From Schmidtea polychroa (lineage: Eukaryota), in NCBI GenBank assembly GCA_044892525.1, contig CM097885.1:186434001-186498000 (forward strand): 64,000 bases of DNA, given 5' to 3'. Below are positions 12,946-64,000 of this stretch, piece after piece. Below the pieces are notes generated by a model. It had not been told where the DNA came from and ran no database searches. It worked only from the letters and a program-made list of their open reading frames with translations. The position numbers and the translations under genes were made by a program. The number at the start of each line of letters is the position of its first letter. Position 1 is the stretch's first letter.

Positions 12946-12948
12946 TTT

Positions 12949-26052: not shown

Positions 26053-26069
26053 TTTTAGGGGGTAAGACT
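26053..26069 (+). promoter_or_regulatory. Polypurine tract
   Basis: ttttagggggtaagact lies immediately before the TG of the 3' LTR at 26070. Confidence 0.65.
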
Positions 26070-27487: not shown

Positions 27488-27556
27488 TAATATAATAAAT
27501 AATTAAAATATAATATAAATACGGGTTCAAAACGAGAACCAAGGGACGATAAAACA

Positions 27557-32854: not shown

Positions 32855-33051
32855 TCAGAGTGTTTCAAGACAAATCAGTACGAAGTTTGATTAATGAAGT
32901 TTATAATTCAGAGTGTTTTAAGATAAATCAGTACGAAGGTTGATTAACGAAGTTTATAATTCAGAGTGTTTTAAGATAAATCAGTACGAAGGTTGATTAA
33001 CGAAGTTTATAATTCAGAGTGATTCAAGACAAACCCATACGAAGGTTGATT
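32855..33051. repeat. 53-bp minisatellite, about 3.7 copies
   Basis: tcagagtg... units start at 32855, 32908, 32961 and 33014. Confidence 0.85.

Positions 33052-33361: not shown

Positions 33362-33427
<66 letters not shown>
33362..33427. repeat. (TAT)n microsatellite
   Basis: Perfect TAT run. Confidence 0.95.
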
Positions 33428-33428
<1 letters not shown>

Positions 33429-33730
33429 TTCTTATTGCTGTACGACCAATTTCTGAGACTGAGGATTGGCTCTCTTGGACAGCCTCGACAAATTATTGCA
33501 CATCACGATTAGTAAGCAAAATGTAAATTAGTAATTATTGGAAAATTTTAATTAACAATTTTAATCGAGAACTAATTACATTAATACATTACGCAAGATT
33601 GTGGATAGATCTGTTACAAAATTATTAAATCTTATTATTATAAGAATTTGTCTTAAAATAATAACAAAAACCAATGGACTATAACCATAACCATAAAGGC
33701 CAAATTCGTTGCGATAAACAGAATTTATTA

Positions 33731-34969
33731 CAGGGTTATGCAAATCCTTATTTATACTAATCAATATACCTTTTTAATTAAAAGTTTTGAAAAAAATAAC
33801 AATAAGGGTCGCAAAGCAAGGACAACACTCAACAATGAACTTAGAGATCGTGTAATAAATTCTTCCAAAAAACCAAATTCTACTATTAAGGATCTTTCAG
33901 AAACCTTTCAACTGGATAGAAAGACAGTTAGAAAGATCCTAAGAGACGAAGAGAATAAAGTCGAGTTTGTACCGGGCGCTGAGAAGTGTAGGAAGACCTG
34001 TCGTCAAAGGTCACCGACTCTAAATCCAGAAGAGAAGGGAATACTCAACATTATAAGCTGCAACAACTCACTTATACAGGATGAGGTAAAAACCCTCTTG
34101 AGCAACGAATTCGGAATAAATACGACGCAATCAAAGGTTTCTAGAAAGTTGAAGAATCTTAAGCTAACCAGAAAAAGATTGACCCGTATTCCGATTGAGA
34201 GGAACACTGATAATCGCCTAGATGAGAGAGCAATATATGCATCTGAAATTTTAATGATAGGTGATGAAAACCTGGTATTTCTTGACGAAACGGGCTTCAA
34301 TCTGCACACAAGTAGGGCATACGGGTATTCTCCTATAAACACAAAAGCTTTTATCTAAGTTCCTGCTAACAGAAATGTGAATAGAAGTTCAATTTGTGTG
34401 ATTGGTATAAATGGTATAGTTGCCTATCAATATCGAACTGGTTCATATAACCAATTTCTATTTATCGAGTTTATATGTGAACATCTAATTCCCTACTTTC
34501 GACAAAACCCAGGCAAATTTCTGGTAATGGACAATGCAAAGTCTCATTCAAGAGATGTCCAGATTTTATGGTCCGAAAATCGAATTCCCGTTAAATTTCT
34601 AATATCTTACTCACCAGAGCTCAACCCAACTGAAGAGTTTTTTTCGATGTTAAAATCACGATATCATGGATTGAAAGCTGCCAACGCAAACATAAGGATA
34701 GAAGATGCTTTAGATGAGTTACTGGGAACTGATATATCTTATGGAGTAGAATATCGTGGTTTTTACTCTAATATGAGGGTATGGGTTGAAAAGGCAAGAC
34801 GAAGGGACCAATTTATATAATAAATGATCCTTTGAAATATATTTATGACGTTTTTAATTTTTTATCTCTCAACCCTCATATTTATATATTTTTATTAAAT
34901 GGGCATATAGATTTGCATAAATGGGGATATAGATTTGTATAAATGAGTATATAGATTTGCATAACCCTG
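33731..34969 (+). mobile_element. Second Tc1/IS630-family transposon
   Basis: TA flanks at 33729-33730 and 34970-34971. TIRs are CAGGGTTATGCAAATC and GATTTGCATAACCCTG. Confidence 0.9.
33738..34820 (+). pseudogene. Tc1-like transposase with one in-frame stop
   Basis: FLDETGFNLHTSRAYGYS, VMDNAKSH and YSPELNPTEEFFSMLK. ORFs 33738 and 34377 share a frame, with TAA at 34356. Confidence 0.9.
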
Positions 34970-40734: not shown

Positions 40735-40890
40735 NNNNNNNNNNNNNNNNNNNNNNNNNNNNNNNNNNNNNNNNNNNNNNNNNNNNNNNNNNNNNNNNNN
40801 NNNNNNNNNNNNNNNNNNNNNNNNNNNNNNNNNNNNNNNNNNNNNNNNNNNNNNNNNNNNNNNNNNNNNNNNNNNNNNNNNNNNNNNNNT
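40735..40890. other. Assembly gap (156 N)
   Basis: Run of N. Confidence 1.
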
Positions 40891-41387
40891 TGAATTAAAG
40901 TAAATTAAGGGCTAAATTTTTAAAATTAACCTATCAATAGTCTAAAATTTTAAATAAGTAAATTAAAGTAATAATTTTTAATCTATTATCAAAAAGTTTG
41001 AATGATAGTCAGCTTTTGAGAAGACAAATTTAAATGGAAATTTTTATGAAATAATTTTCCAAGTCAAAATACAAATTTATATTAAATTAATTTCAAAGAC
41101 AGATTTCAATTAACCACTACTAATAAAAATAATAGTAAATAAGGGTTATATTTTGTAAATAAGTAAATGAAAAGGGTAAATTTTAAAACTAACTAATAAA
41201 TTTTGAAAGAGAATGAGAATTGAGAGTAATAATTAAATTCAAGTAAATTATGGGCATAAATTTTTAATTAAAGTAATAATTTTTAATCTATTATAGAAAA
41301 AGTTTGAATGATAGTCAGGTTTTGAGAAATGAAAATTTTAATGAAATAATTTTTAAAGATAATTTAGATGCAAATTATACAAATAAA

Positions 41388-41465
<78 letters not shown>
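41388..41465. repeat. (AAT)n microsatellite
   Basis: Perfect AAT run. Confidence 0.95.
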
Positions 41466-41466
<1 letters not shown>

Positions 41467-44172
41467 TATTAATAAAAATAATAATAATATTTTATATTGC
41501 TAAGCATTAATAATGTAATTATATTTGAATATTTTTTATTCACGTATAACAATTAATTAAAACAAATATAAATAATATTATTAGATTAAATTAATTAAAA
41601 TGGAATCGAGAAATGATGCAGTATATCAAATTATTGATCCAAGGGCTGTGGGAAAACATTATTTGTTTGTAAATCATTACAATCAAATATGTTTAAGTCA
41701 AAATTTAAAAGGTCAACCAAATACTTACAACCAAATACTAACAAATAATTACTAATAACTAGACAGCAACAATTTATTTTCATCAACCAGTAACTTAGGA
41801 ACAAGTATTTACAACAAAATATCATTTACCATCAACTAGGTACTTACAACTAGAATATTAACAAAATATTCTTTTAATTACAATCAGTAGAAAACTTTTT
41901 CTCAGTAAAATGTCTAAATTTAACAAAAATGATGATTTGCGTCAAATATGAATGAGAATAATTGTCAACTCAAGTCGTTAAAAACATCACATGGAATTGA
42001 ATATAATTTAAATATTTTAAAATGACAACGAAACACTATAAAGTTCTATTTTTTTCCCCCGCAAAACATTCTTCTAATTGATTACTGCTGACTTATTATT
42101 ACAAAGTAAAAATTGCATGCTTATTCAATAAATAGTTTTTGTTAATTCGATTTATTATATATAGTCTGAGTTTATCCGACAGGTTGTTTTGACCCCCTGT
42201 GGGTATTGATCGTAAGTGTATTGGTCGTAAGGGTATTGCTAACACTCAACCCCCACCTACCCATTAACTAGATACTAAGTACCAACAACCAGATACCTAC
42301 AACTAGATACCAAATACTTACAACCGACAACAACCAGGTACTAAGCATTATCAACCTACAACTATATAACAACAATCAGTAAACAACACTGTACCAACTA
42401 CCAAATACAAGATACCAACAACATAGTATCATCAACCAGTAAAAACAATCAAGTACTAACAAATAGATCTTTAAAAGAAAATCCTCTTCACTTGCAATAT
42501 CGGTCGCACTCAACCCCCAACCTACTCATTAATTAGCTACCATGTACTAACCACTAGGTTTCAAACAACAAAATACTAAACACTTACAACTGACTACCAT
42601 GTACTAACAACTACCATCAAAACCTATCGAGAAATTAACAAATATCAACCTACAACTATATAACAACAATCAGTTAACAACACAAGCAACCAACTAGATA
42701 CCAAGTACTTACAATCAACTAACCACACACTTATTCAGTTTTCAATGTTGCCGCTATATGTAATTTTAAACAACTGCTCACGACAATCTACAAAAGACTG
42801 ACTGCCTGCTGCCATTATCTTTTCATCGCGTTTTAAATGAAAGTTGAACACACATGGCTACGTGTCAGGTTGCCAAATTGTCACCATGGCAGGAAGCAGT
42901 ACATCATTAAACTAGAGAGGTATCTTAATTGCTTGCTAGCATCGAGTCAAGGTCGGTCCATCCACTGAAGCCCTGCTTGTCTTCCTCTATATTATCATGG
43001 AATGTTTCTGTTTAATGTAATTCTAATAACATATATTATAAATTATATGTCTTTGTAGGAGGGTTTTATATGCATATATATCAATGAATGTTTTATCATG
43101 GAACTGATACAATGCCTGCTTGTCTTGAAGACTGGAATGCCTCTGATGCTCAGATGTTGTCATCTCATAGATATCATGAAGCTCATTCCCACGTCTCTTT
43201 CACATCCTGTAGAGTTTGATTAATGTTTTTTCAGCTGATTAATGTATTCTAAATTCAAGATGTAATAACTCAATGTCAACAACATTTCTGCAGGGAACGG
43301 GTTTGATCAGCCTCCAGTATAGGTATGTGGAGGCTGATAACAATCGGATATTCAGCTTCTGTCTGAAGAAGCTGAGAAATCCTCAAATATATGTGGCAAT
43401 TCTAATTTTGAACGACGTGGATTTGTGGATTTGTGTTGTGTTTCTCAGAGGAGCTACATTACAACAATTGAAGTGGTCCAGTTTGCCAGAGAAAAGATAA
43501 ACATATTGAAATCGCAATATTAGGGATGCTAAAAGAAAAAGTAAAAAAATATTTTCGCGAGTGTGTGTTATGTTCTTTTGCTTCTGGCACCAATTGTTAT
43601 GTGACTTTTAATATATCATGTTAATGTATATATGATGTTAAATATTGTTGTATTATAGAAAAGCTTGTAGATCCTAGCAGTCTCCTTTAAAACTTGTGTC
43701 GGGACTGCTGAGGTTTTTGTGTGTGGTTTAAAAATAATATACAACAACCATAATATTACAAAATTAAAAAACAACAAACAATAATAATGATAAAATCTTT
43801 ATTATAGCAAATGTTTGTGTTTCCTGGGTTTCTGAGATTCATTGTAGATCATTCATTGTAGTATAAGGATCCAATTACATGAGTTAACACCAACGAAATC
43901 ACAGGTTTTTGGTCTGCTTCAAAAAGAAAATTTAAAACTATGAATGGTAACCACGTAAGTAAATTGCAGAGTTACATAGATAGATATCTTTTGAGAAAGA
44001 GTTTTATGGGGAACTTGGTGGTTTTTGGAATTTGATTAGGTTGCTTGCAATAAATTGATTTTACTTTTATTTTGTGTTATTTTTTAATTTTCTTTTTTTT
44101 CAAAATCTTATTAAAAAATAACTAAATTAAAATAATTTAACTTATAGCCATTGATTTTCATTTGCTTTTTAA

Positions 44173-44930
44173 CCCTTTTAGTGTGTTCCCCGACTATACT
44201 TGTCAACAGTACTGCAAGTCTCCTACACAGCGTGAACCCAGACTAGATTCGACCAAAGCAAAAAATACATTGAATATATAGTATATTGTTATTGATTGTT
44301 ATATATTGAAATATTTATTAAAAATGACATCAAGAAAATGCGGATTATCTGCACAACAAATACATTATTTCTTAGATGAGACTGACATTTTTTTATTGAC
44401 AGTGATGAAGATGCCAGTAGTGACAGTAGTAGCGGCGTGGATAGTGATGACATGGTGGTGGTAGTAATGAAACGCTTTATTATGTAAGTGACGACGATTT
44501 GATATGGTCTCTTACAGCGTGCGCGTCTGACTTTCACTGGAGCTCCTGGGTTAAAAAATGTCGTCGCTGATAAAGATGATCCATTGCAATATTTTGAACT
44601 TTTATTTACTCATGACATGATTGATAGCATTGTCACAGAAACCAACAGACGAGGATTACAACTGAGCTCTCAAACAAATCTAAAAACCCGGTCTAGGATG
44701 CGTCAATGGAGAGAAGTCGATGACGCTGAAATCCGTGTTTTCATAGTTATTTGGTTATACCAAGGAATAGAGCAGAAACCGGAAAATTAAATGTTCAGTA
44801 CTACAAAGCCATTGCTGGAAACACCATACACACGGAAAATAATGTCCGAGCTGCGATTCGACTTGATACTCAAATGTTTACATATTGTTGACAATTACAC
44901 TCTTGTTAGATCTGATTCACCAGCTGAGAA
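44173..44930 (+). mobile_element. piggyBac 5' fragment (left end plus transposase N-terminus)
   Basis: TTAA-CCCTTTT end at 44169-44179, then FTGAPG, PLQYFELLF..IVTETN, WREVDDAEIRVF..QGI..P, TP..RKIMS..RF..ILKCLH..DN. Confidence 0.75.
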
Positions 44931-49522: not shown

Positions 49523-50198
49523 TTAAAAGTGTTACCTTAAAAACTAAAAAATAACGTAATTGAATTATATACTTTGCATTTTTGGAATAAAATTTATGAA
49601 TACATTTGTTGGGCTAAACTTCGAGAGTGTCGAAAATCGGGCTAAGAACGAATAAATAGGATAAAACAAATTTTCAATAAAATCACGAGAAATATAAAAA
49701 TAACTAAAGCAGATAACAATAAAAGAAATAAGAATATAAAAGAAATAAAAATAACTAATAAAACAATAGAATGCATGAGGCGAAATAAGGTGAAATTACC
49801 CAACACACATGGTAGGAAAAGGAAAAAACATAAAATAACAAAAAACGTAAGAAATAAACGAGAAATTTAAGAAAATAAAATAGAAATCCTCAAATAAATG
49901 TATAGGCGAATTAAAACAAAAATTGTATTACGATAAAATGACAATAAACGCGCAGGAAAAACGGGAGGAAAATAATAAAAAAAAAGAAGGAGATAAAAAC
50001 CTTGAAAAGAGAAATAAGACACTTGACAGACAAGGTCCAGGAGAAAGATAGACAACTAGAAATGTTGCCGGAACTCCGACATAGAGTCATTAAAGCGGAG
50101 TCTAAATTAATGCGAATCCGGGAGAAAAACCCTAAAAAGAAACGACAAAATTAAAACCGACAAAAAGCGATGTATATAAATGTGTATAAAATTACTAA

Positions 50199-50873
50199 AT
50201 GTATATCAGTAGTATGAAAAACAAACCGATCATAATAATTCTGATGATGGCAATAATCCTTGATCTGACAAGGCGACAACCCGTAAAGCCCGAAATTGAA
50301 CATATTCGAGACAGCAGAAAATCCCACCAAAAGACCGAACCAACAGCCAAATCATGCATCTATCCAAGTATCATAAAAACCCGTCTTACCGACAATATTC
50401 GAGCCACCCGAACGTACGTCAACAATATCAGATTAATGTGTAATAACCACCCCATGTGCAAAATCATTGATAAAAGAATCCTGGACCAAATTCACCAACT
50501 CGATCAGCTAGAACAACAGGTCCAACATCAAGAAATACAAAACCCAGTCGAACCAGTAGAAATCGCCAAAGAAATAAATGACCACCATGAACTCCTCTAC
50601 GTGGTAATCGTCGAAACCACCGTAATCATGGTAATCATCCTCCTAAAAATCCATAATATCTACCAAGTTTGGAAGAAAAGTCACCCCGTACCGGAAAGAT
50701 CGTCTCGAAGATCCCAAGAAGCTAATATGGCTGACGTAATCCAAGAAAATCTCCGACAACGAACCTCCATCGCAGAAACAGTCAGACCGTCCACAAGTCG
50801 CCGAATATACTACAACATCGAAACCCAACAACCAAATCACCCATCATCAACGGCAACTGAACAACAAACATAA
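50199..50873 (+). CDS. Array ORF, full-length 224 aa putative type I membrane protein (unit 1)
   Basis: Hydrophobic N-terminus (PIIIILMMAIIL), Q/E-rich helical ectodomain, TM LLYVVIVETTVIMVIILL and an S/T/R-rich tail. TATA-like tatataaa lies just upstream. Expression is unproven. Confidence 0.5.
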   Translation: MYISSMKNKPIIIILMMAIILDLTRRQPVKPEIEHIRDSRKSHQKTEPTAKSCIYPSIIKTRLTDNIRATRTYVNNIRLMCNNHPMCKIIDKRILDQIHQLDQLEQQVQHQEIQNPVEPVEIAKEINDHHELLYVVIVETTVIMVIILLKIHNIYQVWKKSHPVPERSSRRSQEANMADVIQENLRQRTSIAETVRPSTSRRIYYNIETQQPNHPSSTATEQQT

Positions 50874-51724
50874 CATTTCGAACTATAACTATTGACAAAA
50901 TTTTCACTGTTTTATTATCTTCTGATGAAACCGGTCACCTTAAGTGGCCACTGCTTGCTTATATTTGTCATTTTCTCTGTTTAATTAAAGTATTTTTTTG
51001 TTGTTAATTTGATTTTATGTTTGTGTAGATTTTGATTGAGAAATTATGGGTTATACCGAAAGAAGGTATGATTCAAATGTATGATATTATGTGAATTGCG
51101 GGACGCAATTTTAACGGGCCCCGGAGTGATTTGTTGGGCTAAACTTCGAGAGTGTCGAAAATCGGGCTAAGAACGAATAAATAGGATAAAAAAAATTTTC
51201 AATAAAATCACGAGAAATATAAAAATAACTAAAGCAGATAACAATAAAAGAAATAAGAATATAAAAGAAATAAAAATAACTAATAAAACAATAGAATGCA
51301 TAAGGCGAAATAAGGTGAAATTACCCAACACACATGGTAGGAAAAGGAAAAAACATAAAATAACAAAAAACGTAAGAAATAAACGAGAAATTTAAGAAAA
51401 TAAAATAGAAATCCTCAAATAAATGTATAGGCGAATTAAAACAAAAATTGTATTACGATAAAATGACAATAAACGCGCAGGAAAAACGGGAGGAAAATAA
51501 TAAAAAAAAAAGAAGGAGATAAAAACCTTGAAAAGAGAAATAAGACACTTGACAGACAAGGTCCAGGAGAAAGATAGACAACTAGAAATGTTGCCGGAAC
51601 TCCGACATAGAGTCATTAAAGCGGAGTCTAAATTAATGCGAATCCGGGAGAAAAACCCTAAAAAGAAACGACAAAATTAAAACCGACAAAAAGCGATGTA
51701 TATAAATGTGTATAAAATTACTAA

Positions 51725-52399
51725 ATGTATATCAGTAGTATGAAAAACAAACCGATCATAATAATTCTGATGATGGCAATAATCCTTGATCTGACAAGGC
51801 GACAACCCGTAAAGCCCGAAATTGAACATATTCGAGACAGCAGAAAATCCCACCAAAAGACCGAACCAACAGCCAAATCATGCATCTATCCAAGTATCAT
51901 AAAAACCCGTCTTACCGACAATATTCGAGCCACCCGAACGTACGTCAACAATATCAGATTAATGTGTAATAACCACCCCATGTGCAAAATCATTGATAAA
52001 AGAATCCTGGACCAAATTCACCAACTCGATCAGCTAGAACAACAGGTCCAACATCAAGAAATACAAAACCCAGTCGAACCAGTAGAAATCGCCAAAGAAA
52101 TAAATGACCACCATGAACTCCTCTACGTGGTAATCGTCGAAACCACCGTAATCATGGTAATCATCCTCCTAAAAATCCATAATATCTACCAAGTTTGGAA
52201 GAAAAGTCACCCCGTACCGGAAAGATCGTCTCGAAGATCCCAAGAAGCTAATATGGCTGACGTAATCCAAGAAAATCTCCGACAACGAACCTCCATCGCA
52301 GAAACAGTCAGACCGTCCACAAGTCGCCGAATATACTACAACATCGAAACCCAACAACCAAATCACCCATCATCAACGGCAACTGAACAACAAACATAA
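51725..52399 (+). CDS. Array ORF, full length (unit 2, allele A)
   Basis: Identical 224 aa protein; CAA at 52241. Confidence 0.5.
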   Translation: MYISSMKNKPIIIILMMAIILDLTRRQPVKPEIEHIRDSRKSHQKTEPTAKSCIYPSIIKTRLTDNIRATRTYVNNIRLMCNNHPMCKIIDKRILDQIHQLDQLEQQVQHQEIQNPVEPVEIAKEINDHHELLYVVIVETTVIMVIILLKIHNIYQVWKKSHPVPERSSRRSQEANMADVIQENLRQRTSIAETVRPSTSRRIYYNIETQQPNHPSSTATEQQT

Positions 52400-53248
52400 C
52401 ATTTCGAACTATAACTATTGACAAAATTTTCACTGTTTTATTATCTTCTGATGAAACCGGTCACCTTAAGTGGCCACTGCTTGCTTATATTTGTCATTTT
52501 CTCTGTTTAATTAAAGTATTTTTTGTTGTTAATTTGATTTTATGTTTGTGTAGATTTTGATTGAGAAATTATGGGTTATACCGAAAGAAGGTATGATCCA
52601 AATGTATGATATTATGTGAATTGCGGGACGCAATTTTAACGGGCCCCGGAGTGATTTGTTGGGCTAAACTTCGAGAGTGTCGAAAATCGGGCTAAGAACG
52701 AATAAATAGGATAAAACAAATTTTCAATAAAATCACGAGAAATATAAAAATAACTAAAGCAGATAACAATAAAAGAAATAAGAATATAAAAGAAATAAAA
52801 ATAACTAATAAAACAATAGAATGCATAAGGCGAAATAAGGTGAAATTACCCAACACACATGGTAGGAAAAGGAAAAAACATAAAATAACAAAAAACGTAA
52901 GAAATAAACGAGAAATTTAAGAAAATAAAATAGAAATCCTCAAATAAATGTATAGGCGAATTAAAACAAAAATTGTATTACGATAAAATGACAATAAACG
53001 CGCAGGAAAAACGGGAGGAAAATAATAAAAAAAAAGAAGGAGATAAAAACCTTGAAAAGAGAATTAAGACACTTGACAGACAAGGTCCAGGAGAAAGATA
53101 GACAACTAGAAATGTTGCCGGAACTCCGACATAGAGTCATTAAAGCGGAGTCTAAATTAATGCGAATCCGGGAGAAAAACCCTAAAAAGAAACGACAAAA
53201 TTAAAACCGACAAAAAGCGATGTATATAAATGTGTATAAAATTACTAA

Positions 53249-53767
53249 ATGTATATCAGTAGTATGAAAAACAAACCGATCATAATAATTCTGATGATGG
53301 CAATAATCCTTGATCTGACAAGGCGACAACCCGTAAAGCCCGAAATTGAACATATTCGAGACAGCAGAAAATCCCACCAAAAGACCGAACCAACAGCCAA
53401 ATCATGCATCTATCCAAGTATCATAAAAACCCGTCTTACCGACAATATTCGAGCCACCCGAACGTACGTCAACAATATCAGATTAATGTGTAATAACCAC
53501 CCCATGTGCAAAATCATTGATAAAAGAATCCTGGACCAAATTCACCAACTCGATCAGCTAGAACAACAGGTCCAACATCAAGAAATACAAAACCCAGTCG
53601 AACCAGTAGAAATCGCCAAAGAAATAAATGACCACCATGAACTCCTCTACGTGGTAATCGTCGAAACCACCGTAATCATGGTAATCATCCTCCTAAAAAT
53701 CCATAATATCTACCAAGTTTGGAAGAAAAGTCACCCCGTACCGGAAAGATCGTCTCGAAGATCCTAA
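53249..53767 (+). CDS. Array ORF, tail-truncated 172 aa (unit 3, allele B)
   Basis: CAA>TAA at 53765. Confidence 0.45.
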   Translation: MYISSMKNKPIIIILMMAIILDLTRRQPVKPEIEHIRDSRKSHQKTEPTAKSCIYPSIIKTRLTDNIRATRTYVNNIRLMCNNHPMCKIIDKRILDQIHQLDQLEQQVQHQEIQNPVEPVEIAKEINDHHELLYVVIVETTVIMVIILLKIHNIYQVWKKSHPVPERSSRRS

Positions 53768-54772
53768 GAAGCTAATATGGCTGACGTAATCCAAGAAAAT
53801 CTCCGACAACGAACCTCCATCGCAGAAACAGTCAGACCGTCCACAAGTCGCCGAATATACTACAACATCGAAACCCAACAACCAAATCACCCATCATCAA
53901 CGGCAACTGAACAACAAACATAACATTTCGAACTATAACTATTGACAAAATTTTCACTGTTTTATTATCTTCTGATGAAACCGGTCACCTTAAGTGGCCA
54001 CTGCTTGCTTATATTTGTCATTTTCTCTGTTTAATTAAAGTATTTTTTGTTGTTAATTTGATTTTATGTTTGTGTAGATTTTGATTGAGAAATTATAGGT
54101 TATACCGAAAGAAGGTATGATCCAAATGTATGATATTATGTGAATTGCGGGACGCAATTTTAACGGGCCCCGGAGTGATTTGTTGGGCTAAACTTCGAGA
54201 GTGTCGAAAATCGGGCTAAGAACGAATAAATAGGATAAAACAAATTTTCAATAAAATCACGAGAAATATAAAAATAACTAAAGCAGATAACAATAAAAGA
54301 AATAAGAATATAAAAGAAATAAAAATAACTAATAAAACAATAGAATGCATAAGGCGAAATAAGGTGAAATTACCCAACACACATGGTAGGAAAAGGAAAA
54401 AACATAAAATAACAAAAAACGTAAGAAATAAACGAGAAATTTAAGAAAATAAAATAGAAATCCTCAAATAAATGTATAGGCGAATTAAAACAAAAATTGT
54501 ATTACGATAAAATGACAATAAACGCGCAGGAAAAACGGGAGGAAAATAATAAAAAAAAAGAAGGAGATAAAAACCTTGAAAAGAGAAATAAGACACTTGA
54601 CAGACAAGGTCCAGGAGAAAGATAGACAACTAGAAATGTTGCCGGAACTCCGACATAGAGTCATTAAAGCGGAGTCTAAATTAATGCGAATCCGGGAGAA
54701 AAACCCTAAAAAGAAACGACAAAATTAAAACCGACAAAAAGCGATGTATATAAATGTGTATAAAATTACTAA

Positions 54773-55447
54773 ATGTATATCAGTAGTATGAAAAACAAAC
54801 CGATCATAATAATTCTGATGATGGCAATAATCCTTGATCTGACAAGGCGACAACCCGTAAAGCCCGAAATTGAACATATTCGAGACAGCAGAAAATCCCA
54901 CCAAAAGACCGAACCAACAGCCAAATCATGCATCTATCCAAGTATCATAAAAACCCGTCTTACCGACAATATTCGAGCCACCCGAACGTACGTCAACAAT
55001 ATCAGATTAATGTGTAATAACCACCCCATGTGCAAAATCATTGATAAAAGAATCCTGGACCAAATTCACCAACTCGATCAGCTAGAACAACAGGTCCAAC
55101 ATCAAGAAATACAAAACCCAGTCGAACCAGTAGAAATCGCCAAAGAAATAAATGACCACCATGAACTCCTCTACGTGGTAATCGTCGAAACCACCGTAAT
55201 CATGGTAATCATCCTCCTAAAAATCCATAATATCTACCAAGTTTGGAAGAAAAGTCACCCCGTACCGGAAAGATCGTCTCGAAGATCCCAAGAAGCTAAT
55301 ATGGCTGACGTAATCCAAGAAAATCTCCGACAACGAACCTCCATCGCAGAAACAGTCAGACCGTCCACAAGTCGCCGAATATACTACAACATCGAAACCC
55401 AACAACCAAATCACCCATCATCAACGGCAACTGAACAACAAACATAA
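54773..55447 (+). CDS. Array ORF, full length (unit 4, allele A)
   Basis: Identical 224 aa protein. Confidence 0.5.
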   Translation: MYISSMKNKPIIIILMMAIILDLTRRQPVKPEIEHIRDSRKSHQKTEPTAKSCIYPSIIKTRLTDNIRATRTYVNNIRLMCNNHPMCKIIDKRILDQIHQLDQLEQQVQHQEIQNPVEPVEIAKEINDHHELLYVVIVETTVIMVIILLKIHNIYQVWKKSHPVPERSSRRSQEANMADVIQENLRQRTSIAETVRPSTSRRIYYNIETQQPNHPSSTATEQQT

Positions 55448-56296
55448 CATTTCGAACTATAACTATTGACAAAATTTTCACTGTTTTATTATCTTCTGAT
55501 GAAACCGGTCACCTTAAGTGGCCACTGCTTGCTTATATTTGTCATTTTCTCTGTTTAATTAAAGTATTTTTTGTTGTTAATTTGATTTTATGTTTGTGTA
55601 GATTTTGATTGAGAAATTATGGGTTATACCGAAAGAAGGTATGATCCAAATGTATGATATTATGTGAATTGCGGGACGCAATTTTAACGGGCCCCGGAGT
55701 GATTTGTTGGGCTAAACTTCGAGAGTGTCGAAAATCGGGCTAAGAACGAATAAATAGGATAAAACAAATTTTCAATAAAATCACGAGAAATATAAAAATA
55801 ACTAAAGCAGATAACAATAAAAGAAATAAGAATATAAAAGAAATAAAAATAACTAATAAAACAATAGAATGCATAAGGCGAAATAAGGTGAAATTACCCA
55901 ACACACATGGTAGGAAAAGGAAAAAACATAAAATAACAAAAAACGTAAGAAATAAACGAGAAATTTAAGAAAATAAAATAGAAATCCTCAAATAAATGTA
56001 TAGGCGAATTAAAACAAAAATTGTATTACGATAAAATGACAATAAACGCGCAGGAAAAACGGGAGGAAAATAATAAAAAAAAAGAAGGAGATAAAAACCT
56101 TGAAAAGAGAATTAAGACACTTGACAGACAAGGTCCAGGAGAAAGATAGACAACTAGAAATGTTGCCGGAACTCCGACATAGAGTCATTAAAGCGGAGTC
56201 TAAATTAATGCGAATCCGGGAGAAAAACCCTAAAAAGAAACGACAAAATTAAAACCGACAAAAAGCGATGTATATAAATGTGTATAAAATTACTAA

Positions 56297-56815
56297 ATGT
56301 ATATCAGTAGTATGAAAAACAAACCGATCATAATAATTCTGATGATGGCAATAATCCTTGATCTGACAAGGCGACAACCCGTAAAGCCCGAAATTGAACA
56401 TATTCGAGACAGCAGAAAATCCCACCAAAAGACCGAACCAACAGCCAAATCATGCATCTATCCAAGTATCATAAAAACCCGTCTTACCGACAATATTCGA
56501 GCCACCCGAACGTACGTCAACAATATCAGATTAATGTGTAATAACCACCCCATGTGCAAAATCATTGATAAAAGAATCCTGGACCAAATTCACCAACTCG
56601 ATCAGCTAGAACAACAGGTCCAACATCAAGAAATACAAAACCCAGTCGAACCAGTAGAAATCGCCAAAGAAATAAATGACCACCATGAACTCCTCTACGT
56701 GGTAATCGTCGAAACCACCGTAATCATGGTAATCATCCTCCTAAAAATCCATAATATCTACCAAGTTTGGAAGAAAAGTCACCCCGTACCGGAAAGATCG
56801 TCTCGAAGATCCTAA
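56297..56815 (+). CDS. Array ORF, truncated (unit 5, allele B)
   Basis: Same TAA as unit 3. Confidence 0.45.
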   Translation: MYISSMKNKPIIIILMMAIILDLTRRQPVKPEIEHIRDSRKSHQKTEPTAKSCIYPSIIKTRLTDNIRATRTYVNNIRLMCNNHPMCKIIDKRILDQIHQLDQLEQQVQHQEIQNPVEPVEIAKEINDHHELLYVVIVETTVIMVIILLKIHNIYQVWKKSHPVPERSSRRS

Positions 56816-57820
56816 GAAGCTAATATGGCTGACGTAATCCAAGAAAATCTCCGACAACGAACCTCCATCGCAGAAACAGTCAGACCGTCCACAAGTCGCC
56901 GAATATACTACAACATCGAAACCCAACAACCAAATCACCCATCATCAACGGCAACTGAACAACAAACATAACATTTCGAACTATAACTATTGACAAAATT
57001 TTCACTGTTTTATTATCTTCTGATGAAACCGGTCACCTTAAGTGGCCACTGCTTGCTTATATTTGTCATTTTCTCTGTTTAATTAAAGTATTTTTTGTTG
57101 TTAATTTGATTTTATGTTTGTGTAGATTTTGATTGAGAAATTATAGGTTATACCGAAAGAAGGTATGATCCAAATGTATGATATTATGTGAATTGCGGGA
57201 CGCAATTTTAACGGGCCCCGGAGTGATTTGTTGGGCTAAACTTCGAGAGTGTCGAAAATCGGGCTAAGAACGAATAAATAGGATAAAACAAATTTTCAAT
57301 AAAATCACGAGAAATATAAAAATAACTAAAGCAGATAACAATAAAAGAAATAAGAATATAAAAGAAATAAAAATAACTAATAAAACAATAGAATGCATAA
57401 GGCGAAATAAGGTGAAATTACCCAACACACATGGTAGGAAAAGGAAAAAACATAAAATAACAAAAAACGTAAGAAATAAACGAGAAATTTAAGAAAATAA
57501 AATAGAAATCCTCAAATAAATGTATAGGCGAATTAAAACAAAAATTGTATTACGATAAAATGACAATAAACGCGCAGGAAAAACGGGAGGAAAATAATAA
57601 AAAAAAAGAAGGAGATAAAAACCTTGAAAAGAGAAATAAGACACTTGACAGACAAGGTCCAGGAGAAAGATAGACAACTAGAAATGTTGCCGGAACTCCG
57701 ACATAGAGTCATTAAAGCGGAGTCTAAATTAATGCGAATCCGGGAGAAAAACCCTAAAAAGAAACGACAAAATTAAAACCGACAAAAAGCGATGTATATA
57801 AATGTGTATAAAATTACTAA

Positions 57821-58495
57821 ATGTATATCAGTAGTATGAAAAACAAACCGATCATAATAATTCTGATGATGGCAATAATCCTTGATCTGACAAGGCGACA
57901 ACCCGTAAAGCCCGAAATTGAACATATTCGAGACAGCAGAAAATCCCACCAAAAGACCGAACCAACAGCCAAATCATGCATCTATCCAAGTATCATAAAA
58001 ACCCGTCTTACCGACAATATTCGAGCCACCCGAACGTACGTCAACAATATCAGATTAATGTGTAATAACCACCCCATGTGCAAAATCATTGATAAAAGAA
58101 TCCTGGACCAAATTCACCAACTCGATCAGCTAGAACAACAGGTCCAACATCAAGAAATACAAAACCCAGTCGAACCAGTAGAAATCGCCAAAGAAATAAA
58201 TGACCACCATGAACTCCTCTACGTGGTAATCGTCGAAACCACCGTAATCATGGTAATCATCCTCCTAAAAATCCATAATATCTACCAAGTTTGGAAGAAA
58301 AGTCACCCCGTACCGGAAAGATCGTCTCGAAGATCCCAAGAAGCTAATATGGCTGACGTAATCCAAGAAAATCTCCGACAACGAACCTCCATCGCAGAAA
58401 CAGTCAGACCGTCCACAAGTCGCCGAATATACTACAACATCGAAACCCAACAACCAAATCACCCATCATCAACGGCAACTGAACAACAAACATAA
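57821..58495 (+). CDS. Array ORF, full length (unit 6, allele A)
   Basis: Identical 224 aa protein. Confidence 0.5.
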   Translation: MYISSMKNKPIIIILMMAIILDLTRRQPVKPEIEHIRDSRKSHQKTEPTAKSCIYPSIIKTRLTDNIRATRTYVNNIRLMCNNHPMCKIIDKRILDQIHQLDQLEQQVQHQEIQNPVEPVEIAKEINDHHELLYVVIVETTVIMVIILLKIHNIYQVWKKSHPVPERSSRRSQEANMADVIQENLRQRTSIAETVRPSTSRRIYYNIETQQPNHPSSTATEQQT

Positions 58496-59344
58496 CATTT
58501 CGAACTATAACTATTGACAAAATTTTCACTGTTTTATTATCTTCTGATGAAACCGGTCACCTTAAGTGGCCACTGCTTGCTTATATTTGTCATTTTCTCT
58601 GTTTAATTAAAGTATTTTTTGTTGTTAATTTGATTTTATGTTTGTGTAGATTTTGATTGAGAAATTATGGGTTATACCGAAAGAAGGTATGATCCAAATG
58701 TATGATATTATGTGAATTGCGGGACGCAATTTTAACGGGCCCCGGAGTGATTTGTTGGGCTAAACTTCGAGAGTGTCGAAAATCGGGCTAAGAACGAATA
58801 AATAGGATAAAACAAATTTTCAATAAAATCACGAGAAATATAAAAATAACTAAAGCAGATAACAATAAAAGAAATAAGAATATAAAAGAAATAAAAATAA
58901 CTAATAAAACAATAGAATGCATAAGGCGAAATAAGGTGAAATTACCCAACACACATGGTAGGAAAAGGAAAAAACATAAAATAACAAAAAACGTAAGAAA
59001 TAAACGAGAAATTTAAGAAAATAAAATAGAAATCCTCAAATAAATGTATAGGCGAATTAAAACAAAAATTGTATTACGATAAAATGACAATAAACGCGCA
59101 GGAAAAACGGGAGGAAAATAATAAAAAAAAAGAAGGAGATAAAAACCTTGAAAAGAGAATTAAGACACTTGACAGACAAGGTCCAGGAGAAAGATAGACA
59201 ACTAGAAATGTTGCCGGAACTCCGACATAGAGTCATTAAAGCGGAGTCTAAATTAATGCGAATCCGGGAGAAAAACCCTAAAAAGAAACGACAAAATTAA
59301 AACCGACAAAAAGCGATGTATATAAATGTGTATAAAATTACTAA

Positions 59345-59863
59345 ATGTATATCAGTAGTATGAAAAACAAACCGATCATAATAATTCTGATGATGGCAAT
59401 AATCCTTGATCTGACAAGGCGACAACCCGTAAAGCCCGAAATTGAACATATTCGAGACAGCAGAAAATCCCACCAAAAGACCGAACCAACAGCCAAATCA
59501 TGCATCTATCCAAGTATCATAAAAACCCGTCTTACCGACAATATTCGAGCCACCCGAACGTACGTCAACAATATCAGATTAATGTGTAATAACCACCCCA
59601 TGTGCAAAATCATTGATAAAAGAATCCTGGACCAAATTCACCAACTCGATCAGCTAGAACAACAGGTCCAACATCAAGAAATACAAAACCCAGTCGAACC
59701 AGTAGAAATCGCCAAAGAAATAAATGACCACCATGAACTCCTCTACGTGGTAATCGTCGAAACCACCGTAATCATGGTAATCATCCTCCTAAAAATCCAT
59801 AATATCTACCAAGTTTGGAAGAAAAGTCACCCCGTACCGGAAAGATCGTCTCGAAGATCCTAA
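59345..59863 (+). CDS. Array ORF, truncated (unit 7, allele B)
   Basis: Same TAA as unit 3. Confidence 0.45.
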   Translation: MYISSMKNKPIIIILMMAIILDLTRRQPVKPEIEHIRDSRKSHQKTEPTAKSCIYPSIIKTRLTDNIRATRTYVNNIRLMCNNHPMCKIIDKRILDQIHQLDQLEQQVQHQEIQNPVEPVEIAKEINDHHELLYVVIVETTVIMVIILLKIHNIYQVWKKSHPVPERSSRRS

Positions 59864-60868
59864 GAAGCTAATATGGCTGACGTAATCCAAGAAAATCTCC
59901 GACAACGAACCTCCATCGCAGAAACAGTCAGACCGTCCACAAGTCGCCGAATATACTACAACATCGAAACCCAACAACCAAATCACCCATCATCAACGGC
60001 AACTGAACAACAAACATAACATTTCGAACTATAACTATTGACAAAATTTTCACTGTTTTATTATCTTCTGATGAAACCGGTCACCTTAAGTGGCCACTGC
60101 TTGCTTATATTTGTCATTTTCTCTGTTTAATTAAAGTATTTTTTGTTGTTAATTTGATTTTATGTTTGTGTAGATTTTGATTGAGAAATTATAGGTTATA
60201 CCGAAAGAAGGTATGATCCAAATGTATGATATTATGTGAATTGCGGGACGCAATTTTAACGGGCCCCGGAGTGATTTGTTGGGCTAAACTTCGAGAGTGT
60301 CGAAAATCGGGCTAAGAACGAATAAATAGGATAAAACAAATTTTCAATAAAATCACGAGAAATATAAAAATAACTAAAGCAGATAACAATAAAAGAAATA
60401 AGAATATAAAAGAAATAAAAATAACTAATAAAACAATAGAATGCATAAGGCGAAATAAGGTGAAATTACCCAACACACATGGTAGGAAAAGGAAAAAACA
60501 TAAAATAACAAAAAACGTAAGAAATAAACGAGAAATTTAAGAAAATAAAATAGAAATCCTCAAATAAATGTATAGGCGAATTAAAACAAAAATTGTATTA
60601 CGATAAAATGACAATAAACGCGCAGGAAAAACGGGAGGAAAATAATAAAAAAAAAGAAGGAGATAAAAACCTTGAAAAGAGAAATAAGACACTTGACAGA
60701 CAAGGTCCAGGAGAAAGATAGACAACTAGAAATGTTGCCGGAACTCCGACATAGAGTCATTAAAGCGGAGTCTAAATTAATGCGAATCCGGGAGAAAAAC
60801 CCTAAAAAGAAACGACAAAATTAAAACCGACAAAAAGCGATGTATATAAATGTGTATAAAATTACTAA

Positions 60869-61543
60869 ATGTATATCAGTAGTATGAAAAACAAACCGAT
60901 CATAATAATTCTGATGATGGCAATAATCCTTGATCTGACAAGGCGACAACCCGTAAAGCCCGAAATTGAACATATTCGAGACAGCAGAAAATCCCACCAA
61001 AAGACCGAACCAACAGCCAAATCATGCATCTATCCAAGTATCATAAAAACCCGTCTTACCGACAATATTCGAGCCACCCGAACGTACGTCAACAATATCA
61101 GATTAATGTGTAATAACCACCCCATGTGCAAAATCATTGATAAAAGAATCCTGGACCAAATTCACCAACTCGATCAGCTAGAACAACAGGTCCAACATCA
61201 AGAAATACAAAACCCAGTCGAACCAGTAGAAATCGCCAAAGAAATAAATGACCACCATGAACTCCTCTACGTGGTAATCGTCGAAACCACCGTAATCATG
61301 GTAATCATCCTCCTAAAAATCCATAATATCTACCAAGTTTGGAAGAAAAGTCACCCCGTACCGGAAAGATCGTCTCGAAGATCCCAAGAAGCTAATATGG
61401 CTGACGTAATCCAAGAAAATCTCCGACAACGAACCTCCATCGCAGAAACAGTCAGACCGTCCACAAGTCGCCGAATATACTACAACATCGAAACCCAACA
61501 ACCAAATCACCCATCATCAACGGCAACTGAACAACAAACATAA
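60869..61543 (+). CDS. Array ORF, full length (unit 8, allele A)
   Basis: Identical 224 aa protein. Confidence 0.5.
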   Translation: MYISSMKNKPIIIILMMAIILDLTRRQPVKPEIEHIRDSRKSHQKTEPTAKSCIYPSIIKTRLTDNIRATRTYVNNIRLMCNNHPMCKIIDKRILDQIHQLDQLEQQVQHQEIQNPVEPVEIAKEINDHHELLYVVIVETTVIMVIILLKIHNIYQVWKKSHPVPERSSRRSQEANMADVIQENLRQRTSIAETVRPSTSRRIYYNIETQQPNHPSSTATEQQT

Positions 61544-62392
61544 CATTTCGAACTATAACTATTGACAAAATTTTCACTGTTTTATTATCTTCTGATGAAA
61601 CCGGTCACCTTAAGTGGCCACTGCTTGCTTATATTTGTCATTTTCTCTGTTTAATTAAAGTATTTTTTGTTGTTAATTTGATTTTATGTTTGTGTAGATT
61701 TTGATTGAGAAATTATGGGTTATACCGAAAGAAGGTATGATCCAAATGTATGATATTATGTGAATTGCGGGACGCAATTTTAACGGGCCCCGGAGTGATT
61801 TGTTGGGCTAAACTTCGAGAGTGTCGAAAATCGGGCTAAGAACGAATAAATAGGATAAAACAAATTTTCAATAAAATCACGAGAAATATAAAAATAACTA
61901 AAGCAGATAACAATAAAAGAAATAAGAATATAAAAGAAATAAAAATAACTAATAAAACAATAGAATGCATAAGGCGAAATAAGGTGAAATTACCCAACAC
62001 ACATGGTAGGAAAAGGAAAAAACATAAAATAACAAAAAACGTAAGAAATAAACGAGAAATTTAAGAAAATAAAATAGAAATCCTCAAATAAATGTATAGG
62101 CGAATTAAAACAAAAATTGTATTACGATAAAATGACAATAAACGCGCAGGAAAAACGGGAGGAAAATAATAAAAAAAAAGAAGGAGATAAAAACCTTGAA
62201 AAGAGAATTAAGACACTTGACAGACAAGGTCCAGGAGAAAGATAGACAACTAGAAATGTTGCCGGAACTCCGACATAGAGTCATTAAAGCGGAGTCTAAA
62301 TTAATGCGAATCCGGGAGAAAAACCCTAAAAAGAAACGACAAAATTAAAACCGACAAAAAGCGATGTATATAAATGTGTATAAAATTACTAA

Positions 62393-62911
62393 ATGTATAT
62401 CAGTAGTATGAAAAACAAACCGATCATAATAATTCTGATGATGGCAATAATCCTTGATCTGACAAGGCGACAACCCGTAAAGCCCGAAATTGAACATATT
62501 CGAGACAGCAGAAAATCCCACCAAAAGACCGAACCAACAGCCAAATCATGCATCTATCCAAGTATCATAAAAACCCGTCTTACCGACAATATTCGAGCCA
62601 CCCGAACGTACGTCAACAATATCAGATTAATGTGTAATAACCACCCCATGTGCAAAATCATTGATAAAAGAATCCTGGACCAAATTCACCAACTCGATCA
62701 GCTAGAACAACAGGTCCAACATCAAGAAATACAAAACCCAGTCGAACCAGTAGAAATCGCCAAAGAAATAAATGACCACCATGAACTCCTCTACGTGGTA
62801 ATCGTCGAAACCACCGTAATCATGGTAATCATCCTCCTAAAAATCCATAATATCTACCAAGTTTGGAAGAAAAGTCACCCCGTACCGGAAAGATCGTCTC
62901 GAAGATCCTAA
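62393..62911 (+). CDS. Array ORF, truncated (unit 9, allele B)
   Basis: Same TAA as unit 3. Confidence 0.45.
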   Translation: MYISSMKNKPIIIILMMAIILDLTRRQPVKPEIEHIRDSRKSHQKTEPTAKSCIYPSIIKTRLTDNIRATRTYVNNIRLMCNNHPMCKIIDKRILDQIHQLDQLEQQVQHQEIQNPVEPVEIAKEINDHHELLYVVIVETTVIMVIILLKIHNIYQVWKKSHPVPERSSRRS

Positions 62912-64000
62912 GAAGCTAATATGGCTGACGTAATCCAAGAAAATCTCCGACAACGAACCTCCATCGCAGAAACAGTCAGACCGTCCACAAGTCGCCGAAT
63001 ATACTACAACATCGAAACCCAACAACCAAATCACCCATCATCAACGGCAACTGAACAACAAACATAACATTTCGAACTATAACTATTGACAAAATTTTCA
63101 CTGTTTTATTATCTTCTGATGAAACCGGTCACCTTAAGTGGCCACTGCTTGCTTATATTTGTCATTTTCTCTGTTTAATTAAAGTATTTTTTGTTGTTAA
63201 TTTGATTTTATGTTTGTGTAGATTTTGATTGAGAAATTATAGGTTATACCGAAAGAAGGTATGATCCAAATGTATGATATTATGTGAATTGCGGGACGCA
63301 ATTTTAACGGGCCCCGGAGTGATTTGTTGGGCTAAACTTCGAGAGTGTCGAAAATCGGGCTAAGAACGAATAAATAGGATAAAACAAATTTTCAATAAAA
63401 TCACGAGAAATATAAAAATAACTAAAGCAGATAACAATAAAAGAAATAAGAATATAAAAGAAATAAAAATAACTAATAAAACAATAGAATGCATAAGGCG
63501 AAATAAGGTGAAATTACCCAACACACATGGTAGGAAAAGGAAAAAACATAAAATAACAAAAAACGTAAGAAATAAACGAGAAATTTAAGAAAATAAAATA
63601 GAAATCCTCAAATAAATGTATAGGCGAATTAAAACAAAAATTGTATTACGATAAAATGACAATAAACGCGCAGGAAAAACGGGAGGAAAATAATAAAAAA
63701 AAAGAAGGAGATAAAAACCTTGAAAAGAGAAATAAGACACTTGACAGACAAGGTCCAGGAGAAAGATAGACAACTAGAAATGTTGCCGGAACTCCGACAT
63801 AGAGTCATTAAAGCGGAGTCTAAATTAATGCGAATCCGGGAGAAAAACCCTAAAAAGAAACGACAAAATTAAAACCGACAAAAAGCGATGTATATAAATG
63901 TGTATAAAATTACTAAATGTATATCAGTAGTATGAAAAACAAACCGATCATAATAATTCTGATGATGGCAATAATCCTTGATCTGACAAGGCGACAACCC

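What the first reader, a model, noticed from the sequence alone, without database searches (positions are those of the whole stretch)
49607..64000. Homogeneous tandem array of an uncharacterised type I membrane protein gene
Seen: at least nine complete 1524-bp units. Each has an A-rich upstream block, a TATA-like box, a 675-bp intronless ORF (signal-like N-terminus, three-Cys helical ectodomain, TM, tail with RIYYNI) and a T-rich downstream block. The ORF sequence is identical among units apart from one stop allele. The two edge units carry private variants. Inference: a very recent gene amplification, an element-borne surface protein, or an integrated concatemer. I do not recognise the protein family.
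Basis: partly seen in the sequence, partly recalled or inferred. Interest (0 to 1): 0.75.

Follow-up and report, generated by a model that had tools for sequence, protein, structure and literature searches.

The report
Tandem array of orphan membrane-protein units
A 1.5-kb DNA unit carrying a small membrane-protein gene with no known relatives is repeated head to tail at least nine and a half times in a transposon-rich region, and the unit's ends suggest a small retrovirus-like element multiplied on the spot, which is a known route to satellite DNA.

Summary
The array is in the sequence as described. It runs from 49607 off the window end, with nine full units (two of 1525 bp, seven of 1524 bp) and a 676-bp partial unit. 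They differ at three sites and are otherwise identical, so they form a 3048-bp higher-order repeat. One variant carries a premature stop, so four of the nine ORFs are broken.

The 224-aa ORF is longer than any open frame in 2000 shuffles. Its signal-plus-anchor layout did not occur in 20000 shuffles, so it is or recently was coding. It has no relative in Pfam, PDB, a word search of 5.8 billion proteins, or an exhaustive search of 1.84 billion representatives.

The array starts exactly at TGTTGGG, and the reverse complement closes a 199-nt segment that is followed by TGG. I therefore read each unit as a long terminal repeat (LTR) plus an internal region of a small non-autonomous retroelement, multiplied by unequal exchange (confidence 0.45). 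There is no polypurine tract (PPT), no dispersed copy in the window, and the right edge is unseen. The main rival is an amplified host orphan gene (0.3).

True copy number cannot be checked here. This is a new member of a known kind, of moderate interest.

The parts
49607..64000 (+). Whole tandem array: 9 complete units plus a 676-bp partial unit. It continues beyond the window.
49607..52656 (+). Edge units 1 and 2 (1525 bp each). Both are the intact-ORF variant. Unit 1 has three private non-coding changes and unit 2 has two.
52657..64000 (+). Higher-order repeat: two variants in strict alternation (3048-bp dimer, about 3.7 copies). They differ at three sites and nowhere else.
54181..54379 (+). 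LTR-like segment of unit 4 (199 nt, TGTTGGG...CCCAACA), holding TATAAA and AATAAA motifs. The same segment opens every unit, at 49607, 51132, 52657, 55705, 57229, 58753, 60277, 61801 and 63325 (each start +198).
54384..54772 (+). Primer-binding-site-like TGG start followed by an A-rich leader. No family match in any frame.
54749..54784 (+). Candidate core promoter of unit 4: TATAAA, and 31 nt downstream the only TCAGT of the unit. A start there would skip the first ATG and use the sixth codon (Met).
   Evidence: start site inferred
50199..50873 (+). ORF, unit 1, intact (224 aa)
51725..52399 (+). ORF, unit 2, intact
53249..53923 (+). ORF, unit 3, broken by one premature stop
54773..55447 (+). 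ORF, unit 4, intact. This copy was used for all protein searches.
56297..56971 (+). ORF, unit 5, broken by one premature stop
57821..58495 (+). ORF, unit 6, intact
59345..60019 (+). ORF, unit 7, broken by one premature stop
60869..61543 (+). ORF, unit 8, intact
62393..63067 (+). ORF, unit 9, broken by one premature stop
55448..55704 (+). T-rich 3' block of unit 4, with ATTAAA 111 nt after the stop and a 7-bp-stem hairpin 21 nt before the unit end. There is no purine tract at the junction.

Best explanation
Each unit is one long terminal repeat (199 nt) plus the 1325-nt internal region of a small, non-autonomous LTR retroelement. The element has no gag or pol. Its only gene sits where an envelope gene would sit, as the last ORF before the next LTR.

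Proposed history:
- Ectopic recombination between the two LTRs of one insertion produced a tandem with shared LTRs.
- Unequal exchange then expanded the tandem. The monomers came first; units 1 and 2 and the ancestor of the second variant collected a few changes.
- A dimer of two variants was then copied at least 3.5 times, so recently that no further change has occurred.
- One variant had already acquired a premature stop, so the stop was carried along into every second unit.

The gene encodes a 224-aa (or 219-aa) single-pass type I membrane protein. Its order is signal-like N-terminus, a largely helical ectodomain with a Cys-x5-Cys turn between two helices, a membrane anchor, and a basic cytoplasmic tail of about 70 aa with a Tyr-x-x-Ile motif.

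Shown: the array, the higher-order repeat, the non-random ORF and membrane architecture, the absence of relatives, and the TG...CA termini.
Inferred: the LTR nature of the 199-nt segment, the route of amplification, expression from the internal TATA/TCAGT pair, and the protein's topology.
For: - The array's left edge falls exactly on TGTTGGG. Only 4% of the unit's phases start with TG and 0.5% with TGTT.
- The exact reverse complement CCCAACA closes a 199-nt segment, and TGG follows 4 nt later in all ten copies. The inverted 7-mer followed by TGG arose in 0.4% of Markov resamples.
- The 199-nt segment holds TATAAA and AATAAA motifs and is about the size of the neighbouring retroelement's 253-nt LTR, which starts TGTTAGGG and ends in CA.
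- The unit's plus strand is A-rich like the neighbouring retroelement. The ORF lies on that strand and is the last feature before the next LTR-like segment.
- The surroundings are transposons: a Ty3/gypsy-type element with a viral fusion glycoprotein, two Tc1/mariner copies and a piggyBac-like fragment.
- The unit's CpG observed/expected ratio is 1.28, against 0.78-0.88 in the flanks.
- Edge units are diverged and the interior is a perfect higher-order repeat. Unequal exchange is expected to produce this, and shared-LTR tandems are a documented origin of arrays (PMC5932611, Fig. 1A and text).
- The ORF is real by statistics.
Against: - There is no purine tract just before the LTR-like segment.
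- The TGG is followed by A-rich sequence that is unlikely to pair far into a tRNA, so the primer-binding site rests on a short motif.
- The same 7-mer also occurs at unit position 1218, and an inverted 7-mer alone turns up in 8% of resamples.
- The LTR features were looked for after the fact.
- There is no dispersed copy or solo LTR in the other 49.6 kb of the window, and no sequence similarity to the neighbouring LTR.
- The right edge and any target-site duplication are outside the window.
- The protein matches no envelope family.
- A TATA box and TCAGT at promoter spacing just before the ORF fit an ordinary compact gene equally well.
Confidence: 0.45

Rival explanations
1. A lineage-specific host gene with no transposon origin. 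It is compact and intronless, with its own TATA/initiator promoter and polyadenylation signal. Tandem duplication between short matching sequences amplified it, and unequal crossing-over then expanded it, as in ampliconic or macrosatellite gene arrays.
For: - TATAAA and the unit's only TCAGT sit 31 nt apart just before the ORF, and ATTAAA lies 111 nt after the stop.
- The last 3 nt of the unit (ATT) also precede the array, consistent with a microhomology junction.
- The unit has no gag, pol or purine tract.
- There are no other copies in the window.
- The ORF and membrane architecture are non-random.
Against: - The array phase starts on TGTT, with an inverted 7-mer and TGG at LTR-like distance.
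- The base composition is strongly strand-asymmetric and retroelement-like.
- The gene has no homologue at all among 1.84 billion representative proteins.
- Four of nine copies carry a stop.
- A 3-nt match has a 1 in 64 chance of occurring.
Confidence: 0.3
2. The copy number and the perfect alternation are partly an assembly product. A short real array, or two alleles of one, was unrolled or polished into identical copies.
For: - There is no difference over 11.3 kb apart from the alternating three sites.
- The scaffold has a gap at 40735-40889, so it is not a finished assembly.
- Nothing in the window can measure read depth.
Against: - The two left-edge units carry their own substitutions and 1-nt insertions. 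A simple unrolling of one or two collapsed copies would not give this, whereas real arrays evolving by unequal exchange are expected to.
- Polishing tends to erase variants, not to set them in strict alternation.
Confidence: 0.1
3. A non-coding satellite whose open frame is fortuitous or long dead.
For: - No relatives anywhere.
- Odd amino-acid composition, with no Gly or Phe.
- A low-confidence structure model, mean pLDDT 60.
- The stop allele is tolerated in four units.
- Only 1 of 8 variable sites falls in the ORF, which is not significant (my binomial estimate is about 0.07).
Against: - The open frame is longer than in all 2000 shuffles of the unit. None of 20000 shuffles of the ORF stayed open.
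- None of 20000 shuffles matched both hydrophobic segments.
- G is enriched at first codon positions.
- The other two plus-strand frames over the same stretch hold 13 and 18 stops.
Confidence: 0.1
4. An integrated head-to-tail concatemer of a small circular replicon or virus genome made by rolling-circle copying.
For: The units are head to tail, about 1.5 kb, with one ORF, an A-rich block and a small hairpin near the junction.
Against: - There is no replication-initiator gene or any other recognisable gene in any frame.
- The hairpin is no better than chance (my estimate is about 0.5 expected per unit), and the region's fold has a z-score of -0.6.
- The repeat is organised as dimers of two variants plus diverged edge monomers.
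- No relative was found among proteins of public viral and metagenome data.
Confidence: 0.05

Closest known systems
Shared-LTR tandem arrays of LTR retrotransposons, and satellites derived from them (route described in PMC5932611; plant examples in PMC7004042)
   Same: Units are head to tail, each one LTR plus one internal region. The array starts on an LTR start. It was expanded by unequal exchange into a higher-order repeat with less homogenised edges, in a transposon-rich setting.
   Different: The LTR status rests on termini and a TGG only. There is no purine tract, no autonomous partner was identified, no dispersed copies were seen, and the internal region holds only an orphan membrane-protein ORF.
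Macrosatellite or ampliconic gene arrays with one ORF per unit (named from my own knowledge: D4Z4/DUX4 in humans, Stellate in Drosophila)
   Same: The unit is kilobase-sized, every unit has an ORF, identity is near-perfect, and intact and broken copies are mixed.
   Different: Those ORFs belong to known protein families (homeobox, CK2-beta-like). This one has no relatives and encodes a membrane protein. Expression and copy-number variation are unknown here.
Envelope genes of retrovirus-like Ty3/gypsy elements of invertebrates (PMC13524379)
   Same: The ORF is the last one before the 3' LTR. It has a signal-like N-terminus, a C-terminal membrane anchor and a cytoplasmic tail. An envelope-bearing Ty3/gypsy element lies 22 kb upstream in the same window.
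   Different: At 224 aa it is a third to half the size of such envelopes. It has no N-glycosylation sequon and no sequence or fold match to any envelope family. The order of hydrophobic N-terminus, helix, Cys turn, helix and anchor recalls a class I fusion subunit, but only from memory.
Non-autonomous LTR elements (LARD or TRIM type; named from my own knowledge)
   Same: Short LTRs flank an internal region without gag or pol. Such elements tend to occur as tandems with shared LTRs.
   Different: Those elements normally carry no ORF, or only gag. They show a clear primer-binding site and purine tract, and they occur as many dispersed copies.

Membership tests
LTR retroelement (non-autonomous), shared-LTR tandem | Direct repeats with TG...CA termini and short inverted ends | tested here: met
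   A 199-nt segment, TGTTGGG...CCCAACA, opens all ten units. An inverted 7-mer alone arises in 8% of resamples.
LTR retroelement (non-autonomous), shared-LTR tandem | Primer-binding site complementary to a tRNA 3' end, just after the 5' LTR | tested here: inconclusive
   TGG lies 4 nt after the segment. The window has no tRNA gene, and no tool here supplies host tRNA sequence, so complementarity could not be tested.
LTR retroelement (non-autonomous), shared-LTR tandem | Polypurine tract just before the 3' LTR | tested here: not met
   The 30 nt before each unit start are mixed and G+C-rich, not a purine run.
LTR retroelement (non-autonomous), shared-LTR tandem | Target-site duplication flanking the insertion, and the array ending in an LTR | not testable with these tools
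   The right edge is beyond 64000.
LTR retroelement (non-autonomous), shared-LTR tandem | Dispersed or solo copies elsewhere | tested here: inconclusive
   None in window 1-49603. The rest of the genome is not available. The ORF's product is not on record in the contig index.
LTR retroelement (autonomous) | gag and pol genes | tested here: not met
   No family match in the ORF or in the other open frames of the unit.
Retroviral or errantiviral envelope protein | Sequence or fold match to a known envelope or fusion family | tested here: not met
   No envelope family in Pfam even at E up to 10. PDB sequence search empty. Fold searches have no match at E <= 0.001, and the model is of low confidence.
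Macrosatellite / ampliconic gene array | Head-to-tail units over 1 kb, each with an ORF, at very high identity | tested here: met
Macrosatellite / ampliconic gene array | Expression of the ORF, and copy-number variation between individuals | not testable with these tools
   No reads or transcript data.
Rolling-circle replicon concatemer | Replication-initiator gene | tested here: not met
Rolling-circle replicon concatemer | Origin stem-loop with a conserved loop motif | not tested
The local hairpins found are no better than chance.
Helitron tandem | Characteristic 5' and 3' termini with a subterminal hairpin, and insertion between A and T | tested here: not met
   By inspection, the unit starts TG and ends ATT. 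The hairpin is 21 nt from the end without the expected terminal motif (termini as I know them for the family).

The most novel reading that the evidence does not exclude
The ORF is a miniature envelope-derived or envelope-mimicking membrane protein, carried by an 'envelope-only' LTR element. The array was amplified because extra copies pay off. One example would be blocking entry or assembly of envelope-bearing retroelements such as the one 22 kb upstream, by analogy with envelope-derived restriction genes known in vertebrates. Another would be a selfish, dosage-dependent factor. Either way it would be a new protein family with a function tied to the conflict between retroelements and their host.
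Probability: 0.07. Interest if true: 0.75.

Novelty: new member of a known kind. Interest (0 to 1): 0.35.

Why it matters
If the reading holds, this locus catches a retroelement-to-satellite transition at a very early stage. The LTR ends, an intact gene and a two-variant higher-order repeat are all still legible, and the premature stop can be placed before the last round of amplification. It also adds a protein-coding orphan, a small type I membrane protein, to the cargo such arrays can carry, in an animal lineage that seems poorly sampled. The closest transposase relative found is only 61% identical, in an acanthocephalan. If instead it is a host gene, it is a young amplified orphan of the kind that marks sex-linked or conflict-driven loci. 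Neither outcome overturns current understanding.

Tried and rejected
**Protein identity.** All of the following were empty:
- Pfam at E <= 0.01 and at E <= 10.
- The word search of 5.8 billion proteins.
- The exhaustive phmmer search of 1.84 billion representatives, which has no length limit and so also covers longer or shorter kin.
- PDB sequences.
- Foldseek against PDB and BFVD with a low-confidence model.

**Other copies.**
- Exact-product look-ups from both candidate start codons found nothing.
- A 23-nt pattern from the ORF found nothing in the metagenome contigs.
- blastn and tblastx of the unit against the rest of the window gave only low-complexity matches.

**Alternative genetic code.** Rejected. 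In-frame stops in the neighbouring retroelement are of mixed types, and the ORF does not call for another code.

**Homology between the LTR-like segment and the neighbouring LTR.** Rejected.

**Minus-strand orientation of the putative element.** Rejected by inspection. It would have neither a TGG after the LTR nor a purine tract before it.

**Structured RNA or DNA at the junction.** Rejected. The z-score is -0.6 and there are no Rfam or tRNA hits.

**Host identification.** It failed beyond 'AT-rich invertebrate-like eukaryote'.

- I fetched no relatives of the retrovirus-like neighbour.
- I made no scans of the viral contig collection with the array's sequence.
- I made no read-through of the stop-allele copies.
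- I made no use of the N run at 40735-40889.
- I did not test primer-binding-site or tRNA pairing, or a rolling-circle origin motif, because the comparison letters would have come from memory.


Full report
**1. The observation**

The array is real in the sequence as given. It starts at 49607 and runs off the window at 64000. It holds nine complete units and a 676-bp partial tenth.
- Units 1 and 2 are 1525 bp, each with one private 1-nt insertion. Units 3 to 9 are 1524 bp.
- Each unit has a 592-nt block that is 53% A, a 675-bp ORF, and a 257-nt block that is 41% T.

- Units 3 to 10 are two variants in strict alternation. They differ at three sites and at nothing else over 11.3 kb, which makes a 3048-bp higher-order repeat.
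- One variant carries a single premature stop in the ORF. Four of the nine complete ORFs (units 3, 5, 7, 9) are therefore broken once each, and five are intact and identical.
- Units 1 and 2, both at the left edge, are of the intact variant. They carry three and two private non-coding changes respectively.
- Because the edge units share all three states of the intact variant, I infer that the variant with the stop is the derived one and arose before the dimer was copied.

**2. Is the ORF a gene?**

The statistics say it is, or recently was.
- No open frame in 2000 shuffles of the unit reached 224 codons (maximum 210). None of 20000 shuffles of the ORF's own letters stayed open.
- The other two plus-strand frames over the same stretch hold 13 and 18 stops.
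- G is enriched at first codon positions.
- In 20000 shuffles that kept the composition of each codon position, none reached both the N-terminal hydrophobic score and the anchor score.

The protein runs in this order:
- a hydrophobic N-terminus (residues 10-22);
- a polar stretch;
- two predicted helices (54-81 and 87-110) joined at a Cys-x5-Cys turn, with a third Cys at 53;
- an anchor around 133-151;
- a basic tail with Tyr-x-x-Ile.

It has no N-glycosylation sequon, no Gly and no Phe. The single-sequence AlphaFold model is weak (mean pLDDT 60), so the helices are only indicative.

Variation among units cannot test constraint. One of eight variable sites lies in the ORF, and that one is the stop.

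**3. Relatives**

None were found.
- Pfam and the word search of 5.8 billion proteins found nothing.
- The exhaustive search of 1.84 billion representatives has no length window and returned nothing at E <= 0.001.
- PDB sequences and two fold searches returned nothing usable.
- The exact product is not on record on any indexed contig. A 23-nt pattern from the ORF is absent from the metagenome contigs.

**4. Surroundings**

The window is AT-rich (24-31% G+C outside elements) and full of mobile elements.
- A Ty3/gypsy-type retrovirus-like element spans 11862-27556. It has 253-nt LTRs that are about 99% identical, a gag with zinc knuckles, a Monjiviricetes-type fusion glycoprotein, and protease-like, reverse transcriptase, RNase H and integrase domains.
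- A Tc1/mariner copy with 78-nt inverted ends (26256-27487) splits that element's 3' LTR.
- A second Tc1-like copy lies at 33657-34817.
- A piggyBac-like fragment lies at 44503-44787.

The unit has no similarity to any of these. The standard genetic code applies. The best relative of the Tc1 open frame is 61% identical, in the acanthocephalan Pomphorhynchus laevis. This is a weak pointer to an invertebrate host and no more than that.

**5. What the unit looks like**

- The left edge of the array falls exactly on TGTTGGG. Its exact reverse complement closes a 199-nt segment, and TGG follows 4 nt later, in all ten copies.
- That segment holds TATAAA and AATAAA motifs. It is close in size to the neighbour's LTR, which begins TGTTAGGG and ends in CA.
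- By resampling, the inverted 7-mer followed by TGG arises in 0.4% of trials, and 4% of unit phases start with TG.
- The ORF lies on the A-rich strand and is the last feature before the next such segment, which is where envelope genes sit.
- The unit's CpG content (observed/expected 1.28) differs from its flanks (0.78-0.88).

Points against the LTR reading:
- There is no purine tract before the segment.
- The sequence after TGG is A-rich and unlikely to pair far with a tRNA.
- The inverted 7-mer also occurs at unit position 1218, and alone it arises in 8% of trials.
- No other copy is in the window.
- I looked for these features after the fact.

A TATAAA and the unit's only TCAGT lie 31 nt apart just before the ORF. 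A start there would skip the first ATG and use the Met at codon 6, which gives a more ordinary signal-like N-terminus. Several upstream ATGs in the leader (by eye) also argue for an internal promoter or for splicing.

**6. Mechanism**

My preferred reading (confidence 0.45) is an insertion of a small non-autonomous LTR element carrying one membrane-protein gene. I propose this sequence of events:
- Ectopic exchange between the element's LTRs turned the insertion into a shared-LTR tandem.
- Unequal exchange then expanded the tandem.
- The last expansion copied a two-variant dimer.

This route is documented for LTR elements, and unequal exchange is expected to build higher-order repeats (PMC5932611). 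Edge units that escape homogenisation fit it.

The rivals are:
- an amplified host orphan gene with its own promoter (0.3);
- an assembly that inflates or regularises the copy number (0.1, and compatible with either origin);
- a dead or fortuitous ORF in a satellite (0.1);
- an integrated rolling-circle concatemer (0.05), disfavoured by the lack of any replication gene and by the dimer organisation.

What the protein does is not shown. I infer a cell-surface or endomembrane single-pass protein with a coiled ectodomain and a sorting motif in its tail. The copies with the stop would give a shortened product.

**7. Comparison and novelty**

The array works like known transposon-derived tandem arrays and like macrosatellites with one ORF per unit. 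It is not a demonstrated member of any envelope family. As an LTR element it meets the terminal-repeat test, fails the purine-tract test, and cannot be tested for target-site duplication. I rate it a new member of a known kind, with interest 0.35.

**8. Rules and slips**

- I recorded the place and the codon change of the array's stop allele before I saw that the array might be a virus-like element. My scripts printed them, and my notebook entry holds them. I have deleted nothing and do not repeat them here.
- I built no consensus and no repaired or read-through sequence.
- I fetched no animal-virus relatives.
- I left the N run at 40735-40889 alone.
- No contig that I take for human was met.

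Noticed in passing
window 11862-27556: A retrovirus-like Ty3/gypsy element with 253-nt LTRs about 99% identical (TG...CA). It has a gag with zinc knuckles, a Monjiviricetes-type (rhabdovirus/chuvirus-like) fusion glycoprotein placed between gag and pol, then protease-like, RT, RNase H and integrase domains, and about 3 kb of further open frames with no family match. It is decayed. The gag-region frame has about 3 in-frame stops. The glycoprotein is in two pieces in different frames, so it has at least one frameshift. The pol frame has about 3 in-frame stops. No target-site duplication was seen. Envelope-before-pol arrangements and chuvirus-like glycoproteins next to gypsy pol are reported in PMC13524379.
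   Followed up: partly
window 26256-27487: A Tc1/mariner copy (DDE_3 domain, 78-nt inverted ends at 96% complementarity) is inserted in the 3' LTR of the retrovirus-like element. Its transposase is in two overlapping frames.
   Followed up: partly
window 33657-34817: A second Tc1-like copy (helix-turn-helix plus DDE_3). The best protein relative is 61% identical, in the acanthocephalan Pomphorhynchus laevis. Further hits are in Hydra and in microsporidia of amphipods. This is the only pointer to the host.
   Followed up: partly
window 44503-44787: A piggyBac-type transposase fragment (PF13843, E = 1e-8), about 5 kb upstream of the array.
   Followed up: no
window 8262-8655 and 29515-29857: Inverted repeats of about 400 nt (84-99% complementary) lie 21 kb apart and bracket the retrovirus-like element and the ORFs at 8836-11619. 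They are either two copies of one repeat in opposite orientation or the ends of a large composite element.
   Followed up: no
window 8836-11619: Three consecutive plus-strand ORFs: a 197-aa ORF with C2H2 zinc fingers, a 436-aa ORF whose only database relative (30% identity) carries Endonuclease_7 and zinc-finger domains, and a 213-aa ORF with no match. This may be an undescribed mobile-element gene set.
   Followed up: partly
window 1-49603: All recognisable transposon genes (retroelement, both Tc1 copies, piggyBac fragment), and the array's ORFs further on, lie on the plus strand. The sample is small, but a one-strand arrangement is what unistrand small-RNA source loci look like.
   Followed up: no
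window 54181-55704 against flanks: CpG observed/expected is 1.28 in the unit (1.72 in its A-rich block), against 0.78-0.88 in the flanks and the retroelement. GpC is depleted in the ORF (0.57).
   Followed up: no
window 41382-41489, 33362-33433, 32855-33051, 40735-40889: An (AAT)36 microsatellite with a complementary (ATT) run 8 kb away, a 53-nt tandem repeat of about 3.7 copies, and a 155-nt run of N that was left untouched.
   Followed up: no
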